A stretch of 59,513 bases of DNA, counting the filler, from Platydemus manokwari (taxonomy: Eukaryota): NCBI GenBank assembly GCA_037951405.1. It is 6 parts of 6 records of this genome, joined end to end, with 100 filler letters (N's around TTAATTAATTAA, not from the genome) between each part and the next. Parts side by side here need not be neighbours in the genome. Positions count along the whole stretch, not along the records: positions 39,745 to 48,802 come from JBBMOY011306206.1; 5 more parts are not named here. The stretch is one strand, 5' to 3'. A program made the translations under genes and the position numbers. Of the stretch, positions 39,745 through 48,802 are shown one piece after another (within the stretch, counting starts at the first letter, position 1; each line of letters opens with the position of its first letter). Below the pieces are notes generated by a model. It saw nothing but the letters and a program-made list of their open reading frames with translations. It did no database searches and was not told where the DNA came from.

Positions 39745-40343
39745 AATATTAATACTAATAAAGACAGTTATGAAAAAGATTTTATGAACGTATCGTCTCC
39801 ATAATATTGTAAGAATATCTTGGAAACTAATGATCGGGTGTATACCATTTTTAGCCTAATTTTTTATTATAAATCATCAATACAAAACAATGATAGTTAT
39901 AAAATCCGAGATACGCAATAGACGAAAAGTCAGATTTTGGAATATATCGGCTAGCAGCAGTCACACAGAAAATGATGATGAAAAATTTAATTCAGTAAAT
40001 AGTGATAATGAGAAATCACATTCTACAATCTCATTAGTAGATTGGGATAAATACAAAATAAAAACAACACAGAATTACACCAAAAAAACACTGCACCATC
40101 AGATTTATTTATGCCATCAACCTTCACACCACCATCTTTTTACCCGATAAAAAATTTGACGAAATGAAACCTATAATAATAGATAATAAGCAAAAAATTC
40201 CAAATCCAAGAAGTCAGCAGCACTGAGCGGGAAAATGAAAGAGGCAATGAAAATGCTCTGCCAAGTTCTCACATCTTCATGACAATATCACGACCGGGTA
40301 GAACACCAACTTCAAAATAAAATTAAATAAATAAAACGATAAT

Positions 40344-43300
40344 CCCATAATAGATTCCGGATCTATTGTTACAATTATATCAGAAACATTACTAATCAAG
40401 AAAGAGAAAAGTCAAATGGACTTATATGAAGAGTCAAAGTCGTTATCAGGTCATAACTTAACAATAGTAGGTTGCACTACAGTAAAATTAGAAATTTCAG
40501 AAAAAGATACTCTCAATAAGTACTAGTCATGAAAGATATCCTGTTTTATGTCTGTTAGAAATGGATGTTTTGGAACAACTAGAAGGAATAATTATGGATC
40601 TGCGTACAGGTAATATTTTACAATTGGAAACAGGTAAGGTAGCACATAAAGCCAAAGAAGTTTTTATAAATCAAATTGTTACTATTCCAGCTAGATCTGA
40701 AATTGAATGTTATGCCGACACTTGGAACCAATACGGTAGTGACTTATTGTTTGAACCAAATCCAAAATTTGTTGAGCAATATCAAATGCCATTATGCTAT
40801 GGAATTGTTCAATCTGAAAACAATACTGCTCCTTTATGATTGGTAAATTTCAATGAAAAATCGGTCACTTTAAAACATGATACAAAACTAGGGATTCTAA
40901 CCATAATCATAGAATCAGAAAACTAGACGTCACCTGAAATTCAAAATACAAAATATGGTGAAATAATAATAGACAGTAAAATTTTAACCATTCCACTAAA
41001 ACATACTTTATTCAACTTACAGAAGAAATATTCTGGGTTGATAGCCTAATATGAATTCGATGTCGAAAGTACACACGTAGTTGAACACAAAATACCACTA
41101 TTACCAGGATATAGTAGTCCTATTAAATTAAGGCCATATAGAATTCCCTATGCATATCAAAATGAAAGCAAATGTCAGAAGGACGAAATGGAATTATAAG
41201 ATATAGCTTTTTACCCTAGGGTTTCCTTGTGGTCCTGATTAAAAAAAGGAGGGTACTCTGAGATGATGTGTCGACTATAGAAAAATGAACGCTATCACAC
41301 GAAAAGATAATTAGGCTCTTCCTTTTTGCTCAGGCAATTTACGACAAAATGGTAAAATCGGAAATATTTTCGAAATTTTATCTCAATAAAGGGTACTGAC
41401 AGTTTGCAATTAAAGAGTCAGATAAATGTAAAACAGCTTTTACAAATGGAGGAGGACTAAAAGAATTCAACGTATTATCTTTTGGACTCACAGGTGCACC
41501 AGCTTTATTTCAACAAGGTATGGAATTCATTCTTATGGATGTATCTCATGCAATGATGTATATAAACGATATAATTATATTCTCTGAAACTTTTGAACAA
41601 CATTTAAGAGATATTAAAGAAGTATTGAAACGACTGAAAATGGTCAATCTATAATTAAGAACATCCAAATGCAAATGGAGGAAATCGGAAGTAATTTATA
41701 TCGGTCATGTTATTTCAAAAGATAGACTGAGACCAAATCCAGCTAGAGTAGAAAAAGTCATAAATTTCCCAATACCAAATAATGTCGATGATGTTCGAGG
41801 AATTTTAGGATTAGTGGGATATTATAGAAAGTTTATAAAAAATTTCTCACGTGAAGCTCATCCACTGAATGTATTACTGAAGAAAAATAGTAAATTTTAC
41901 TGGAAGTAGCAGCAGCAAGAAGCATTTGAAATTCTGAAAAATAAATTGATTAATAAATCGATATTGAGACACCCAGATAGTAGCATACGCAAGTAGAGCG
42001 CTGAAGAAACACGGGAAGAACTATGCTATTGTATATGCTGTCGAATATTTCAAACACTATTTGATAGAAAGAAAAATAATATTATATACCGATCACAGTC
42101 TATTACAGTGGTTGATGACGAGTAGAGACACTACTAGAAAATTGATATCTACAAGAATATAACATTGAAATCAGGTACCACTAAGGAAATGCAAATGCGG
42201 ATATATTATCTAGAATAAAAAAAATTTCTGAACAAACTTTAAGAAATGAGATAAGAGGAGACAACACAGTGTTTACTCACAAAATCGGAACTATGGCCAA
42301 CATTCAGAAAAATCAAGAAGATCATGATGAAATACGAAAAATACAACAGACACTGGAAGCACAAAAGTTTCTTATCAAACCAACAGAGATAAAAACACAT
42401 GATTATATTTTCCAAGATGGAATATTTAAATACTACAATGGTCAAAAAATTACATTAGTAGTACCTAAGAAGCATCGAGAAACTTTACTAATGCAATATT
42501 ACGATCGCGCATTGGGCGGTCATCTTTCAGGCAGAAAAATATTATCAAGATTGAGAACTAAATATCACTGGGATACAATTGAATTCGATACAAAATACTG
42601 GTGCAGAACTTGCAAAATTTGTATGACGAGAAGAAACACGGGTAAACACATGAAGGTACCTTTAAAGCCAATAACAGCACTACCATCATCAATGGAATTT
42701 ACAGCAATGGAAATAATATGTCCATTTCCAGAAACCTCAAGTGGAAACAAATATATACTTGTCTTCAATGACTATCTAACAAAATGGCCTGAGTCAATTG
42801 CAATTAAAGATCAACAAGCTGAAACAATCGCACAAGTTTTTATAGAAAATATTATTTTCCGGTTTGGAAAACCAAAGAAAACACCCACAGATCAAAGAAG
42901 AAACTTCATGAGTTTAATTTTTAAATCAATTTTCAGAATTATTCGGAATTTTAAAGTTAAATACGTCTCCTTATCATCCACAAATAGGCGGGTTAGTGGA
43001 AAGATTCAATGGGACATTTATAAATATGTTATCATCCTACACTAGAAATCAAAGAGATTGGGATTTGTATATTAGTCCATGTCTATATGCGTATCGTAAC
43101 GCCGTCCATAAAGGTACCGCAGAGGCTCCATTTTATCTTATGCATTTGAGAAGAAACAATATGTCAATTGATCTAAATTTTCAAGCGATGCAATCTCAAT
43201 ATATGAAAGTGACCGATTATAAAACGCTCATGCAAAGAGAGACTTCAATCAGCATGGCATAAAGCAAGATTAACAAATAAAATATCAACAAGAACAATAT

Positions 43301-43500
43301 AAAATGTCATACGATAAAAATGCATTTGAGCAAGGAATAAAAGTAGGAGACCTCGTCTATTTAAATTGACCAGAACCCAAAAATGACATGTCCCCAAAAT
43401 TCCAACGACCATTTAAAGGACCTTATAGGGTTACCGTAACCACTACAACGAATTTAAAATTGAAGCTAAATGCTAGGAAAAACTCTGAAACAATTATGCT
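40344..43500 (+). pseudogene. pol: Gypsy pol (protease, RT, RNase H, integrase), disrupted
   Basis: IIDSGSIVTIISE (DSG at 40353), PIKLRPYRIP, CVDYRKMN, YINDIII (YxDD decayed), GLVGYYRKFI, GGHL..CRTCKIC zinc-binding region, DYLTKWPE, TDQ, VERFNGT, FKGPYRV. Confidence 0.92.
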
Positions 43501-44900
43501 AATAGATATAAAAAGGTTCAAAATCAAGAAAAATTATGTTATGAATTGAGATCAAAAATAAAAGAAAAGGATATAACAAGTGATAACATCAATCACAACA
43601 ATAAATATCACAAAAATAAACTAAATAATATATTTACAGTTTTAAGCATTGTAAGCTTATTTAAAATTGCAGAAATGGTTATGGAACGCGCCCTAATCGA
43701 GTTCAACTTAATTAAAGAGTTGACTATATATTCATCGTACACTACAATAATGCGAATTTGCGACTGTCGAGATTTTAGAACTTCACGTATTTGGAGTATA
43801 GAATCTAACAATCTTACAGAAGAATTTACGTTTGACGATAACAATAATAAAACAATTATAAGAAATTTAAAAACAAACAAGAGATATATGTGGGGAATAG
43901 CATATTGGAATAGCTCTTTATACGACTACAATTGGGCAGACATATTCATAAAATTACACATATGGACAAAAGATATTAAAAATAAAATCGAAATTGAACC
44001 AAAATTTAAGGGGGTTATTCTGAAATGGAAACCTCGATCGAAAATGAAAGCCAACATTTTCATAAAAAGAGATCGGTGGAACTATACGGAAGAAATGGAT
44101 CATCAAAATAGGTTCATAAAATGCGAAAACCTTAAGTTAAACAGGAAATATATAATCAAGATAATATATTACGAACTTAAATTACGAGATGATTGGAAAT
44201 GCGAAGTAGATAAATGGGTAAAAATATTGCTTGGAAGAGCGACATCTAAAACGGAAAATCAAAGACATCAAAATACTAATTACTACAAAATCAAAATACG
44301 AAGACCTGCGGAACCCAAGGAAAAAGCAGTCATCACTCTAAGCTTTATGGATTTAGCAAAAAACTCTACCATTGAATGTATCTACAGGTTTATTTACGAA
44401 CCTGCTGCGAGATGAGCAATATCAATTAAAGGCGGAGTATTGGAAAGAAATAGCGGGAATATAGACACTTATACTTGTGGAATACATTTCAATTCAAATT
44501 AAACCCCAAAACCATACAGAAGAATATTTAACCATTAATAATTACTATTATAAATTTAATAATAATATTTCAGAATCTAGAAGAACAATACCTTCAACTG
44601 GTTTCAATCAATCATGACAACTTAATTCTGAGGAAAATTTCCAATCGATTTCACGGAATTTCGATTACGCTGGTCTAATAATCATAATTTCGCTATATAT
44701 AACATCTTTACTGATCACTGCTTTGACTATCAAATCATCATTTAATCAAACTCGGAAGATCCACATCCCAAATCGGGCATTGATTTTATTAACTTCAGTC
44801 TGAATAAACATTGATGAACTCTGCGCATGCCTTTTAGCTAAAATATATGTGTAATCTATATTTATAACTATAGCTATATCTACATTTTCATTGGTTAATT
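43501..44900 (+). pseudogene. Env-position module: hydrophobic leader, FN3-like repeats, transmembrane segments
   Basis: In frame with the pol-like tail NRYKKV..YELRSK. Contains IFTVLSIVSLF, TIIRNLKTNKRY and VILKWKP...ENLKLNRKYIIKI; after a frameshift, AGLIIIISLYITSLLITALTI at 44669-44731. Confidence 0.5.
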
Positions 44901-45470
44901 TAAACAAAATAATAATTAATCAATCAATTGTAAAACCAAAGGCTAATGGTCAACCAGTATAAAGAAGGGTATAAATTGGTCATCGAAGAGTGAAAAAATT
45001 CTGCCTAAACTGATCCGAAGTCTGAACTGACAAGGATTCAATAAAAGAAGTATATTTCATTCAATCCAAGTCAATCAATTCAATCAAAAGCATGAAAAAA
45101 ATCAGCAGAACAAAACAATTGTGCCGTAATATCAAGAAAATCCCAAGAAAAACAAATCAATTTCCAATAGTAAGCTTTATTTCCAACTCCGAAGTGCCAA
45201 ATTATCTTCGATCGACAGACTGGGAAATGGGATTTTGGATTACAGAGGTTCCTAAAGAAAAGAAAATGTGGTTATACGAATTGAGAGAAGAAGAACCAAT
45301 TGGAATCTGGGAACTATGTGCGGTAGTTGCAGAACTCCAAGTCGAAAATGTGACTGGATAAAAATTATTCGTAATGTCAAGCGAAGCATCGTGGAATACT
45401 TCACAAGAAGATTGGACCAAAACAACGAAACTCCTTCCTCAGAAAACACCACAGTCTAGAGAAAATTAGA

Positions 45471-45970
45471 GAAAATCTCATTTTCATTGATGCCGAATTC
45501 AAGACAAAGAATTTGGATAACAAAATATCCCCAGTGTCCGTTACGATCTTCAATTAAGAAGGAAAGGTCCTGCTTGATACGAAAGTAAACCCACATGGTA
45601 GGGCTTTCGAATTCGGGAATAATATTCACGGAATCACTGAATTCGAAACCTGAGGAAAAATGAACGAATATGAATGTATTAGAAAAATCCAAGAAATAGT
45701 CAGAAACAAAATACCGGTCGGGCATGATCTAAATATGGAAATATTTCATCTCTCAATAAAAGTGAATCAACTCTTAGGCATTCGGGATCTATGCAACGCA
45801 CCAGTATTATTTGATATGGGAATACCGCGTAGGAATTCTAGATCATATTTTTCACTAAAGATAGTCGCAAAAACATTATGCGGAATAGACATACAACAAC
45901 CAAGCCAGGACAATTCATTGAAAGATAGATAGAAAGAAACGGTGCGAAATATATCAAAAAATTGAGAAAA
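45471..45970 (+). pseudogene. REX4/ISG20-like DEDDh 3'-5' exonuclease domain inside the Gypsy element
   Basis: One frame reads LIFIDAEF..PVSVTIFN*EGKVLLDTKVNP..IHGITE..*..IQEIVRNKIPVGHDLNME..IRDL..FSLKIVAKTLCGIDIQQ..NSLKD, with stops at 45555 and 45651. Confidence 0.78.
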
Positions 45971-46701
45971 ACTAGAGAGATCACCACTACATAAAACCAC
46001 AGGAGAAGGCCAAAATCTTTATTGAAGAATATCGAAAAAGGAAGAGTAGCGAAGATCAAATAATAAGATAAAAGAAATAATAAGATAAAAATAGTTTTTG
46101 GCTATTTCAAAATCCGAATTCCGCAGGAGAAAACATCACAAGATCTGCGTCCACAACTATCAAGCAACAGAAGAGATCAAATAGATTTAACGAAGGATCT
46201 TGAAGAGGAACCTACTGAAACTTGGGATTTATCAGCACAGTGCACAATCGAGGAAACTGAAGAAGCCACATATGATTCCAAAATGGAAATATCGAAGGTA
46301 AGTGAAGATAATCGACAATCAAAGAAAAGCTGAGAAAAGCACACATGCAGATCATGTAAAATCATCTTCAAGCAAGAATGTTAGAAAATGTAATTCGAAT
46401 GGAAGATCAAACGTGCAAAATCCTGAAGACTGTCACCAAAATAGCCTTTCAAAAACCAAATGGCGAAATTGGAATTCTAAAGTTTAATAATTGAATAAAT
46501 GTATTAAAAAATCTTTTGAATGTTTAAAATTTATATATCATCATATATAATTATGTAACTTAATAGAATTACGCAATTACAAAAAATGAGAAATAATTCA
46601 AATTCATAAAAATATTTACTAACCAAATTGATAAATTAAATCCAAATAAAAAAAGCATATTGAATAATATTAACATCAAATTTTGAGGACAAAATTTATC
46701 T

Positions 46702-46715
46702 AAAATGGGGAGATA
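46702..46715 (+). other. Polypurine tract
   Basis: aaaatggggagata immediately before TGT, preceded by a gaggac motif typical of Gypsy 3' ends. Confidence 0.7.
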
Positions 46716-47438
46716 TGTTAAGTAGTCAAGATACAATGAATAAATAAACTACCTTTTGTTGAGAATTTGGTCCTATCTCGGTTTAGAGTTATATAGGACA
46801 ATCTCTCGGAGGTTTCAAGAACGATAGCTATAATTATGATGATGGTAGTTTAATTATACGAATAGTGTCCTATTTCGGCTTTCCATGGGCCTCATCAGTG
46901 TCTTAGACCAGAGACAGATAAGACTAAAATAAATCTAGAAAATAACTATCTGCTATATAATAATTTTGAGACCAATTCATCAAGTAACCCAAAACCCAGG
47001 GTTATTGTATTATGGCTAAAAATCCTCGCAGAATCGGACTGAATTTTAAAACGCTGACAGGCAATAAATTTGGACGCATAAATCCCGTCAGAGAATGAAA
47101 ATCCAATTCATATTGGAATCCAGATTGAGCTACGTGTATGATGGATGATCGTAGCTCAATCTGATAATTAATTAAAACATAATTATTATACCAGAATTAA
47201 TTATAATTAATTATATAAAGAACATATTATCAACAAGTATAAATAATCGAAAAATATACAAAATTACACAAAAATAAAATTTCTGTTCAAATTTAAAAAT
47301 TTATGATGAAGTATGTTAACGATATTTTATTGTCATGTTTTAGGGTATTTTAAATAATTTGTTTTAATTGAATAAACATTATTGTTTTCATTTTATTTTA
47401 ATTCTGTATTTCTATTTTAAATATTGGCTTATATAACA
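46716..47438 (+). repeat. Putative 3' LTR (about 723 bp)
   Basis: Starts TGTTA right after the PPT, AATAAA near 47372, ends TAACA. Cannot be confirmed as a direct repeat because the 5' LTR is absent. Confidence 0.6.
46867..46924 (-). ncRNA. Type III hammerhead ribozyme
   Basis: Minus strand GUCUUA-UC^-UGUCU-cuggucua-AGACA-CUGAUGA-GGC-ccauggaaa-GCC-GAAA-UAGGAC. Full conserved core, stems I, II and III all pair, AUC cleavage triplet (cut between 46917 and 46916). Confidence 0.9.
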
Positions 47439-48802
47439 TTAACCGGTGTGTATCGACTCTTTCAAGCTTGTTCTCATCGTTTCTGTAGTTATTTTGGTTG
47501 GTTTTGTCACGTACTCCGCATATCATATTCCCATTGCAATCTTAACTGTTTCGATTGTTTAAAAGATGTTATTTTAAATGGCTAAAACTTTCTAAATGTT
47601 TACATATTGAACTCATTCTATTAGTTATTAGCACTAGTTATTAACAAAAATCTTCACTCATTGTAACTCAACACTTATTAGAATTTTAAAATAATTTTTA
47701 TTTCTCATATTGTATTGGAAACATGTTAGGTTAAATATTAGTCTCCTTAATCACAAATGTACAATGATCTTAATGAAGAAGGATATATTTTATTTAAAAA
47801 ATTTTCATAATCATAGAAATAGTTGAAGAAACCAAAAGATTAATATAATAAAATTAGTAGGATAGAGCTATTAATAAAATTTAAAAATTATAAAAGTACA
47901 ACAAAATCCCAACTTTAATCAGTCAGCATATTCAACAACTACTTGAACTCAAATTACTGAATTACATTATTTTTTAAAAATATATTTTTTAAATAAGCTG
48001 TTGAATGATACCACATCATCATTTATTTTAACAATAATTTTTGTATCAAATTTAAGCAACCATTTTGTACATTTAAAAGAATTCGATTCAATTCCATCAA
48101 TTCTTACAACAAAGAATATTATAGAAATGTAAAACAACCATATTTATCAAAAACTCATTTACATAAATCTCAGAGAATTTACAAATAATGTAGGCGGAAA
48201 TCAGAACTGTAGTTTTATTTAACTTTTAATCAAAATAAATACTATTTAGTGGGTGGAAGAATTTAATTATTTATAATTAAGAAAAATAAAAATAACCGGT
48301 ACTTTATAAGTAAAAACATAATATGATCTTAAATTCACTTATTTATAAATAAAAACAATAAATACGTGTGTGGGTGGTAAAATAAATTTTGTGATTTGTA
48401 TATTTACAATTACGATTTAATATTTCTATACTTAGAACAGAAACAACTGTTTAATTATGCTTGTGTATCCCAAGAAAATTTTGCAGATAAAAGAAATAAC
48501 ATCTTGTTAGTGAGATGAATTTTTGACAATTTAAAAGAAAATTTTTAAATGAAAGTGGTTTTAATCAAAAGAAACTAAATATACTAAATATAAGAGAAGC
48601 AATTTTAATTTTACAATATAATTTATTCATGGAATTCAAATTTACCACATATACTTAAAGTCATAAAAAATATATTTTATTTTATTGAGTATTACGTGAA
48701 ACAAATCATATAAGACTATATATATATACAGTGTAATAAAATTAAAGTTGACTTTGAATTGCAAATCAAAGAGAAAAAATTTTATAATCGGGTATAGCTA
48801 TG

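What the first reader, a model, noticed from the sequence alone, without database searches (positions are those of the whole stretch)
39890..47438. Candidate new retroelement system: Gypsy + FN3/TM surface module + DEDDh exonuclease + ribozyme-bearing LTR
Seen: one strand carries PR-RT-RH-IN, an FN3-like/TM region, an exonuclease, a PPT and a putative LTR with a hammerhead, with no gap between them. Established: canonical Gypsy elements encode gag-pol with optional env, and hammerheads in LTRs are known mainly from non-autonomous plant retrozymes and Penelope pseudo-LTRs. Inference: an autonomous, possibly infectious lineage that processes its own RNA with a ribozyme and a nuclease. I do not know of this combination but cannot search for it.
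Basis: partly seen in the sequence, partly recalled or inferred. Interest (0 to 1): 0.93.

Follow-up and report, generated by a model that had tools for sequence, protein, structure and literature searches.

The report
Dead Gypsy provirus with antisense hammerhead
This is a decayed copy of an envelope-carrying Gypsy-type retroelement whose lineage also carries an RNA-exonuclease gene and a self-cleaving hammerhead RNA motif near its terminal repeat, but the hammerhead lies on the strand opposite the genes, a combination I could not find described.

Summary
Compared with its nearest relatives, the polyprotein region has at least 20 stops and 5 frameshifts. The exonuclease gene has 5 stops and 1 frameshift.

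RT, RNase H and integrase are confirmed by Pfam. The exonuclease is confirmed only through relatives. These are 24 proteins, the best 61% identical, with an ISG20/ISG20L2/SDN1-type DEDDh fold and an N-terminal cupin-like barrel.

A complete type III hammerhead lies at 46867-46924. It is on the minus strand, antisense to all the genes, so it cannot cut the element's own genomic RNA.

One distant relative, contig L003, repeats the layout:
- an envelope-PR-RT-RH-IN polyprotein;
- two exonuclease ORFs;
- a purine tract;
- two antisense type III hammerheads at the start of the presumed LTR.

The exonuclease and the ribozyme are therefore lineage features, not chance insertions.

"FN3-like" could not be tested. 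The LTR is inferred and its end is undetermined. The host was not identified.

GAG-ENV-POL Gypsy elements, exonuclease ORFs in LTR elements (DEDDy type) and hammerheads in LTRs (plant retrozymes) are each known separately. I did not find this combination, or the antisense orientation, in the papers I could search.

The parts
39746..43501 (+). Polyprotein gene (tail of an envelope-like domain, then PR-RT-RH-IN). It is cut by the left edge of the piece and broken by at least 20 in-frame stops and at least 5 frame changes.
   Evidence: tblastn of L003 ORF1 (aa 362-1974 of the part held) gives E 4e-168 and up to 61% identity.
39746..39937 (+). Region homologous to the C-terminal end of the fusion-glycoprotein domain of the L003 polyprotein.
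   Evidence: The leftmost aligned stretch has E 7.8e-11 and starts at the first base of the piece. In L003 that domain matches Pfam Monjiviricetes_fusion with E 3e-66.
40300..40590 (+). Presumed aspartic protease (weak evidence).
   Evidence: A DSG motif and 15 residues aligned to the end of L003's RVP domain. Pfam finds nothing on the pieces.
41243..41711 (+). Reverse transcriptase domain.
   Evidence: Pfam RVT_1 with E 6.9e-11 on a piece. 150 of 158 residues of L003's RT align.
41901..42160 (+). RNase H domain.
   Evidence: Pfam RT_RNaseH with E 5.9e-13; mapping.
42461..42980 (+). Integrase (zinc-binding H2C2 domain plus catalytic core).
   Evidence: Pfam Integrase_H2C2 with E 1.9e-13 and rve with E 9.5e-5; mapping.
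43489..44740 (+). Post-integrase region of unknown family. It has a signal/anchor-like hydrophobic segment near its start and a strong transmembrane-like segment near its end, in another reading frame.
   Evidence: Hydrophobicity scan. No relatives found, no Pfam match above threshold, no similarity to L003. AlphaFold pLDDT is 31.
45092..45983 (+). Exonuclease gene (cupin-like N-terminal domain plus ISG20/REXO/SDN-type DEDDh domain). It has its own ATG and is broken by 5 stops and 1 frame change, with part missing.
   Evidence: tblastn of P0001 aa 1-339 gives E 2e-64.
46702..46713 (+). Polypurine-tract-like run, two bases before TG.
   Evidence: Sequence. It aligns with the purine run before TGTTGAG in L003.
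46716..47673 (+). Candidate 3' LTR. The start is supported. The end is undetermined: 47438, 47646 or 47673 each give a short terminal inverted repeat.
   Evidence: There is no second LTR in the piece, so this is an inference.
46867..46924 (-). Type III hammerhead motif: stem III 7 bp, stem I 5 bp, stem II 3 bp, CUGAUGA and GAAA cores. The predicted cut is after the C at 46917.
   Evidence: Rfam Hammerhead_3 gives 20 bits. My descriptor found an equal motif in 0 of 1000 shuffles. Pair table. It corresponds to HHR2 of L003.
46770..46784 (-). Possible echo of the 3' half of a second, decayed hammerhead (weak evidence).
   Evidence: 13 of 15 nt match; 29 of 500 shuffles do as well.
47121..47163 (+). 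Perfect 14-bp hairpin inside the candidate LTR.
   Evidence: Fold z-score is -6.5.
47674..48802 (.). AT-rich flank (about 21% G+C) with no recognisable gene.

Best explanation
WHAT IT IS. The piece holds the 3' two-thirds of a long-dead copy of an envelope-carrying Ty3/gypsy (errantivirus-like) retroelement. The host is an unidentified AT-rich eukaryote.

SHOWN. Its lineage has the envelope-like fusion glycoprotein upstream of PR-RT-RH-IN in one polyprotein. After integrase come a membrane-protein-like stretch and one or two separate ORFs for a cupin + DEDDh 3'-5' exonuclease of the ISG20/ISG20L2/SDN1 kind. Next come a spacer of about 600-700 nt and a purine tract. Type III hammerhead ribozymes then follow at the inner edge of the presumed LTR, written on the strand antisense to all the genes.

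INFERRED.
- The ribozymes cannot act on the genomic or messenger RNA.
- They would instead cut antisense transcripts that start in the 3' LTR or enter through it. The cut falls just before such transcripts run into the coding region. The same motifs in the 5' LTR would cut antisense transcripts at the outer edge of the element.
- The antisense body would be left uncapped, with a 5'-OH end.
- My preferred reading is that the ribozymes and a small-RNA/RNA-degrading type of exonuclease are accessory equipment that limits antisense RNA and small-RNA silencing of the element.

In this copy nothing is functional except possibly the ribozyme motif.
For: ARCHITECTURE
- Pfam domains on the window.
- Colinear alignment to L003 ORF1, E 4e-168, with domain mapping.
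- L003's gene list and domains.

EXONUCLEASE
- 24 relatives among 1.84 billion representatives, the best 61% identical.
- All ten relatives scanned carry RNase_T.
- Closest solved structures are ISG20L2 at 2.9e-8, SDN1 at 6e-7 and ISG20.
- The structure model has pLDDT 90.5, with TM-scores of 0.81-0.84 to ISG20L2/ISG20 and a cupin-like N-terminal domain.
- Catalytic residues are kept in the 18 aligned relatives: D 17/17, E 17/17, D/E 17/18, H 15/17, D 14/14.

RIBOZYME
- Window motif.
- L003 Hammerhead_3 hit of 33.8 bits, E 5e-4, also on the minus strand and right after the purine tract.
- A second L003 copy lies 158 nt further on.
- The three motifs keep the catalytic core while stems I and III differ at almost every pair and still pair.
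- The window motif sits at the same distance from the purine tract as L003's HHR2.

LITERATURE
- GAG-ENV-POL Ty3/gypsy elements in Platyhelminthes, Nematoda and Bryozoa (PMC13524379).
- Envelope in frame between gag and pol in planarian Burro elements (PMC6431247).
Against: - Only two independent loci (the window and L003) show the full layout.
- The LTR is inferred from a purine tract plus TG. No second LTR is available in either locus.
- Both hammerheads score below Rfam's gathering score of 48.5 bits.
- In the window the hammerhead fold (-9.7 kcal/mol) is less stable than an alternative fold (-14.7 kcal/mol).
- There are no expression data, so antisense transcription is assumed.
- The anti-silencing role is inference from the kind of exonuclease and the strand of the ribozyme.
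- The host is unknown.
Confidence: 0.7

Rival explanations
1. One reading: the hammerhead lies in the element's own transcript and, together with the nuclease, processes the genomic RNA, as in retrozymes or Penelope-like elements.
For: A hammerhead motif really is inside the presumed LTR. Plant retrozymes and Penelope-like elements use sense-strand hammerheads (PMC4918200, PMC7761336).
Against: The motif is on the minus strand in the window and twice in L003. No ribozyme family matches the plus strand. The complement of a hammerhead core is not catalytic.
Confidence: 0.04
2. The tandem hammerheads are a small retrozyme-like passenger living in the LTR. Antisense transcripts would release a unit of about 110-160 nt between two cuts that could be circularised. 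The unit serves itself rather than the element.
For: Two hammerheads lie 158 nt apart in L003. That unit folds far better than shuffles do, z -4.96. Animal retrozyme units are 150-300 nt long (PMC7761336).
Against: It has the same place and orientation in two elements whose exonucleases are only 35% identical. In L003 the first hammerhead's outer strand overlaps the terminal TGTTGAG of the LTR. Animal retrozymes carry type I hammerheads, not type III (PMC7229834).
Confidence: 0.2
3. The exonuclease serves replication rather than counter-defence. It might trim RNA or cDNA 3' ends, or proofread for an unusually long retroelement.
For: The DEDDh fold also matches the DnaQ epsilon proofreading subunits. 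L003 is at least 17 kb long with a 3764-aa ORF. 3'-end processing was proposed for the DEDDy ORFs of rotifer elements (PMC5408684).
Against: The best sequence and structure matches are RNA exonucleases (ISG20L2, SDN1, ISG20, Pan2), not proofreaders. The gene is a separate ORF, not fused to RT.
Confidence: 0.2
4. The exonuclease is a host gene fragment or processed pseudogene that happened to land behind a Gypsy element.
For: It has its own ATG and no introns.
Against: L003 has the same position and orientation, with two paralogous copies. The family has only 24 members among 1.84 billion representatives.
Confidence: 0.03
5. The hammerhead in the window is a chance match.
For: The Rfam score is far below the gathering score (20 against 48.5 bits), and the fold z-score is unremarkable.
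Against: 0 of 1000 shuffles gave an equal motif, and 4 of 1000 gave any weaker one. There is an independent hit at the homologous place in L003.
Confidence: 0.02

Closest known systems
GAG-ENV-POL errantivirus-like Ty3/gypsy elements of Platyhelminthes, Nematoda and Bryozoa (PMC13524379)
   Same: Ty3/gypsy pol with an envelope fusion glycoprotein placed upstream of pol. This is seen in L003, and the tail of that domain lies at the left edge of the window.
   Different: That paper mentions no exonuclease ORF and no hammerhead (0 occurrences of either word). I did not place the RT in a tree.
Burro / GYPSM1 giant Gypsy elements of planarians (PMC6431247)
   Same: Envelope in frame between gag and pol inside a giant polyprotein, with hits to mononegavirus-type fusion glycoproteins.
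   Different: Burro has a dUTPase between PR and RT, and many apoptosis/ubiquitin domains. No dUTPase was found here or in L003. No exonuclease or ribozyme is reported for Burro.
Juno and Vesta LTR retrotransposons of bdelloid rotifers, with an exonuclease ORF3 (PMC5408684)
   Same: A separate 3'-5' exonuclease ORF downstream of pol in a Gypsy-like LTR element.
   Different: Theirs is the RNase D-like DEDDy type. This one is DEDDh (Pfam RNase_T; ISG20/SDN1-like) with a cupin-like N-terminal domain.
Plant LTR retrozymes (PMC4918200, PMC7761336)
   Same: A type III hammerhead embedded in an LTR next to Ty3/gypsy-style ends.
   Different: Retrozymes are small and non-coding, come from plants, and their ribozyme is in the sense of the element's RNA. 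Here the element is coding and the ribozyme is antisense.
Penelope-like elements and Terminons with hammerheads in terminal repeats (PMC6431247)
   Same: Retroelements with hammerheads in terminal repeats. Terminons also carry exonuclease ORFs.
   Different: They have a different RT class, type I or minimal hammerheads on the sense strand, and DEDDy exonucleases.
ISG20, ISG20L2 and SDN1 (PDB 1wlj, 7yw5, 5z9x)
   Same: DEDDh fold and motifs; best sequence and structure matches.
   Different: Sequence identity is only 17-24%. The second acidic motif residue is E in 10 of the 18 relatives. There is an extra cupin-like domain, and the gene is encoded by a retroelement.

Membership tests
Ty3/gypsy (Metaviridae) LTR retroelement | Pol domains in the order PR-RT-RNase H-IN | tested here: met
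   The protease evidence is weak.
Ty3/gypsy (Metaviridae) LTR retroelement | Two LTRs in direct orientation with a target-site duplication, and a primer-binding site | not testable with these tools
   The 5' end lies outside the piece, and there is no repeat pair in the piece.
Ty3/gypsy (Metaviridae) LTR retroelement | Polypurine tract abutting a TG...CA LTR | tested here: inconclusive
   The purine run at 46702-46713 followed by TG aligns with L003's junction. The LTR end is not fixed.
GAG-ENV-POL errantivirus-like elements | Viral fusion glycoprotein encoded upstream of pol | tested here: inconclusive
   It is clear in L003 (Monjiviricetes_fusion, E 3e-66). The window holds only the last ~60 codons of the homologous region (E 7.8e-11).
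Burro giant Gypsy | dUTPase between PR and RT | tested here: not met
   No dUTPase match in the window pieces or in L003 ORF1.
Hammerhead ribozyme, type III | Core CUGANGA...GAAA, a non-G base at the cleavage site, an A-U pair closing stem III, and three helices with stem III open | tested here: met
   window; L003.
Hammerhead ribozyme, type III | Score at or above Rfam's gathering score for RF00008 | tested here: not met
   20 bits (window) and 33.8 bits (L003) against 48.5 bits.
Hammerhead ribozyme, type III | Self-cleavage | not testable with these tools
   No activity or RNA-end data are available.
Plant LTR retrozyme | Non-autonomous (no coding capacity), with the hammerhead in the sense of the element's RNA | tested here: not met
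   The lineage is coding and the ribozyme is antisense.
DEDDh exonuclease (Pfam RNase_T; ISG20/REXO/SDN group) | Match to PF00929 and the DEDDh fold | tested here: met
   This is met for the relatives. The window's own stop-free pieces give no Pfam or PDB match, so membership rests on 61% identity to P0001.
DEDDh exonuclease (Pfam RNase_T; ISG20/REXO/SDN group) | Five catalytic residues kept | tested here: met
   They are kept in the relatives, with D or E at the third position. The window's gene is broken, so the test does not apply to this copy.
Rotifer DEDDy ORF3 (Juno/Vesta) | RNase D-like DEDDy domain | tested here: not met
   Pfam and structure matches assign DEDDh, with a histidine in the last motif.
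Fibronectin type III domain | Significant match to an FN3 profile or fold | tested here: inconclusive
   Only sub-threshold hits (Fn3-I_PB4 E 0.3, DUF5126 E 0.017). The model is unusable and there are no relatives.

The most novel reading that the evidence does not exclude
An envelope-carrying Ty3/gypsy lineage carries a two-part counter-silencing kit. The first part is ribozymes written on its antisense strand at the LTR edge. They sever antisense (small-RNA precursor) transcripts before these enter the coding region. The second part is an SDN/ISG20-type exonuclease that degrades small RNAs. Such an autonomous LTR element with LTR-embedded type III hammerheads would also be a candidate relative of the ancestors of LTR retrozymes.
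Probability: 0.2. Interest if true: 0.9.

Novelty: new variant of a known kind. Interest (0 to 1): 0.72.

Why it matters
Type III hammerheads in LTRs are known from small non-coding plant retrozymes, and animal hammerheads are mostly type I (PMC7761336). A coding, envelope-carrying Gypsy lineage with conserved type III hammerheads at its LTR edge would widen where such ribozymes live. It would also bear on the open question of where LTR retrozymes came from.

The antisense orientation implies a job other than processing the element's own RNA. Together with an ISG20/SDN-type exonuclease whose catalytic residues are kept across the family, it suggests a retroelement that manages antisense or small RNAs. 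That idea can be tested with existing kinds of RNA data.

It also adds a DEDDh case to the DEDDy exonuclease ORFs already known in rotifer LTR elements.

Tried and rejected
- **Exonuclease pieces.** Pfam and PDB searches with the window's own stop-free exonuclease pieces found nothing. Only the all-against-library search reached relatives.
- **308-codon open stretch after integrase.** It has no relatives of 170-539 aa and no similarity to the L003 polyprotein tail or ORF2. The single-sequence AlphaFold model has pLDDT 31, so I ran no fold search on it.
- **Minus-strand ORFs in 43600-47200.** No Pfam match.
- **Whole-piece Rfam search at E<=1.** It missed the hammerhead. The hit appeared only when the search was restricted to 851 bases.
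- **Formal pair counting.** The MAFFT alignments of the three hammerheads (A2, A3) are out of structural register. I therefore did not use the count of structure pairs and read the pairs from a script, from the core outwards.
- **LTR end.** Three candidate ends exist and none is decisive.
- **Host identification.** The integrase piece has no relative above 42% identity. The sample accessions of L001-L003 are not in the paper library.
- **A second hammerhead in the window.** Only a 13/15-nt echo, not significant.
- **Viral structure library.** Only generic DEDDh and cupin hits.


Full report
**Scope and self-check**

I worked only on 39745-48802. Three points of conduct need stating.

- To make query references I listed stop-free pieces and printed raw frame translations. 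These outputs show indirectly where stops lie. I used them only as references and repeat no break positions here.
- I looked up the contigs of two exonuclease relatives before I knew what they were. One of them, L003, turned out to be a retrovirus-like contig with a viral fusion glycoprotein.
- From that point I made no further look-ups or pattern scans for relatives. 

**What is in the piece**

The piece is about 30% G+C with an A-rich plus strand as far as roughly 47200.

Pfam on stop-free plus-strand pieces finds RVT_1, RT_RNaseH, Integrase_H2C2 and rve in that order. It finds nothing on the minus strand.

The polyprotein of L003 aligns colinearly to 39746-43501 with E 4e-168. This gives the following domain bounds:
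- RT 41243-41711
- RNase H 41901-42160
- integrase 42461-42980
- similarity continuing to 43501

Protease is weak: a DSG motif plus 15 aligned residues.

The alignment starts at the first base of the piece. It starts inside the region that is the end of a Monjiviricetes_fusion glycoprotein domain in L003 (E 3e-66 in L003; leftmost stretch E 7.8e-11). So the element is cut by the edge of the piece and does not start at 39890.

The copy is dead. Against L003 the polyprotein region shows at least 20 in-frame stops and at least 5 frame changes.

**The region after integrase**

A 308-codon open stretch (43489-44412) has no relatives and no Pfam match above threshold. The only FN3-flavoured hits have E 0.3 and 0.017. 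Its structure model is unusable (pLDDT 31).

It does have a signal/anchor-like hydrophobic segment near its start. A strong transmembrane-like segment follows about 348 codons later in another frame. The tail of the L003 polyprotein has a similar pair of hydrophobic segments, but there is no sequence similarity.

A membrane protein is therefore plausible. 'FN3' is untested.

**The exonuclease**

The window's own pieces match nothing in Pfam or the PDB.

One 92-residue piece finds 24 proteins among 1.84 billion representatives, the best (P0001, 349 aa) at 61% identity. All ten relatives scanned carry Pfam RNase_T.

P0001 aa 1-339 aligns to 45092-45983 with E 2e-64, starting at an ATG. It is therefore a separate gene on the pol strand, here broken by 5 stops and 1 frame change, with part missing.

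The closest solved relatives of P0001 are ISG20L2 (2.9e-8), SDN1 (6e-7) and ISG20.

A confident model (pLDDT 90.5) superposes on ISG20L2 and ISG20 with TM-scores of 0.81-0.84. It also shows an N-terminal cupin-like barrel.

Across 18 relatives the catalytic positions are kept: D 17/17, E 17/17, D or E 17/18, H 15/17, D 14/14. The family therefore looks like active DEDDh enzymes.

**The ribozyme**

Rfam on the whole piece finds no hammerhead at E<=1. On 46650-47500 it gives a sub-threshold Hammerhead_3 hit on the minus strand (20 bits).

A descriptor of my own finds one complete type III hammerhead at 46867-46924 (-):
- stem III of 7 bp, stem I of 5 bp, stem II of 3 bp
- CUGAUGA and GAAA cores
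- a C at the cleavage site

None of 1000 dinucleotide shuffles gave an equal motif, and 4 gave any weaker one.

Its hammerhead fold (-9.7 kcal/mol) is less stable than an alternative fold (-14.7 kcal/mol).

It is antisense to every gene of the element. No ribozyme family matches the plus strand.

**The relative, L003**

L003 is the part I hold of a 17-kb contig that carries P0013, an exonuclease 35% identical to the window's. In order it has:
- a 3764-aa ORF with fusion glycoprotein, PR, RT, RNase H and IN
- a 472-aa ORF
- a 492-aa RNase_T ORF

The two smaller ORFs are paralogues (E 3e-13).

About 600 nt after the last stop lies a purine run followed by TGTTGAG. Starting two bases into that presumed LTR, Rfam finds a type III hammerhead on the minus strand (33.8 bits, E 5e-4). 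A second copy lies 158 nt further on.

For both L003 motifs the hammerhead fold is the minimum-energy fold or within 0.3 kcal/mol of it.

Read from the core outwards, the three hammerheads keep the catalytic core and nearly the same stem II and loop. Stems I and III differ at almost every pair and still pair.

An alignment of the two junctions puts the window's hammerhead at the place of L003's second copy, 154 and 163 nt from the purine tract respectively. The place of the first copy is decayed in the window.

**What follows from this**

- The exonuclease and the hammerheads are features of the lineage. They are not nested strangers and not chance.
- The LTR itself is inferred. No second copy is available in either locus, and the end in the window could be 47438, 47646 or 47673.

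**Mechanism (inference)**

- The hammerheads lie upstream of TATA-like sequences, seen by eye in both loci. They are therefore outside the 5' part of the sense transcript, and only their complement is present in its 3' end.
- They can act only on antisense RNA.
- In the 3' LTR they would cut antisense transcripts at the border of the coding region. In the 5' LTR they would cut at the outer edge of the element.
- The downstream product would be uncapped with a 5'-OH end.
- Together with an exonuclease whose nearest known kin degrade viral, ribosomal-precursor or small RNAs, I favour an accessory role in limiting antisense RNA and small-RNA silencing.

Alternatives are set out under the rival explanations: a retrozyme-like passenger that makes a ~110-160-nt RNA (the L003 unit folds with z -4.96), and a replication or proofreading role for the exonuclease.

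**Comparison with what is known**

- GAG-ENV-POL Ty3/gypsy elements are described in flatworms, nematodes and bryozoans (PMC13524379). Envelope in frame between gag and pol is described in planarian Burro elements (PMC6431247). Neither text mentions an exonuclease or a ribozyme for these elements. The dUTPase typical of Burro is absent here.
- Rotifer Juno and Vesta elements have an exonuclease ORF3, but of the DEDDy type (PMC5408684).
- Type III hammerheads in LTRs are known from non-coding plant retrozymes, in sense orientation (PMC4918200, PMC7761336).
- I found no paper linking type III hammerheads with flatworms, or hammerheads with planarian LTR elements. The library does not hold Repbase or Dfam, so prior cataloguing cannot be excluded.

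**Host**

The host was not identified. The integrase piece has no relative above 42% identity. The closest exonuclease relative comes from two environmental or unlabelled samples with 29.5% G+C.

**Verdict**

This is a new variant of known kinds. It is of real interest, mainly for the conserved antisense type III hammerheads. The evidence rests on two loci.

Noticed in passing
window 47121-47163 (+): A perfect 14-bp hairpin inside the candidate LTR, with fold z-score -6.5. Rfam gives only weak hits shaped like miRNA precursors (MIR845_1, E 0.26).
   Followed up: partly
window 46058-46090: An exact tandem duplication of a 17-nt unit just 3' of the exonuclease gene.
   Followed up: no
L003 12560-12910: At least five tandem units of about 62 nt run to the end of the contig, downstream of the hammerheads.
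   Followed up: no
L003 8345-9760 and 10001-11476: The two ORFs after the polyprotein are paralogues (26% identity, E 3e-13). The first barely matches RNase_T (E 0.009) and may be an inactive copy. The window shows no trace of a second copy.
   Followed up: partly
L001 1-1841 and L002 1-1599: The same sequence was recovered from two independent samples. It has 29.5% G+C and an intact 349-aa exonuclease ORF 61% identical to the window's broken one. The contigs are too short to show what surrounds the gene.
   Followed up: partly
P0001 aa 1-130 (corresponds to window about 45092-45420): The exonuclease protein family has an N-terminal cupin-like beta-barrel (Foldseek E about 1e-5 to RmlC-like cupins). 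ISG20 and SDN1 lack this domain.
   Followed up: partly
L003 1-1260 (polyprotein aa 46-420): A strong match to Pfam Monjiviricetes_fusion (E 3e-66) inside the same ORF as PR-RT-RH-IN, that is, an envelope fused in frame upstream of pol.
   Followed up: partly
window 46757-46763 and 47667-47673: TGTTGAG and its exact complement CTCAACA lie 917 nt apart. TGTTGAG is also the first seven bases of the presumed LTR in L003. This may mark an alternative LTR boundary or an internal repeat of the terminus.
   Followed up: partly
window 44986-45063 (+): A weak snoR35-like Rfam hit (23 bits, E 0.23), most likely chance.
   Followed up: no
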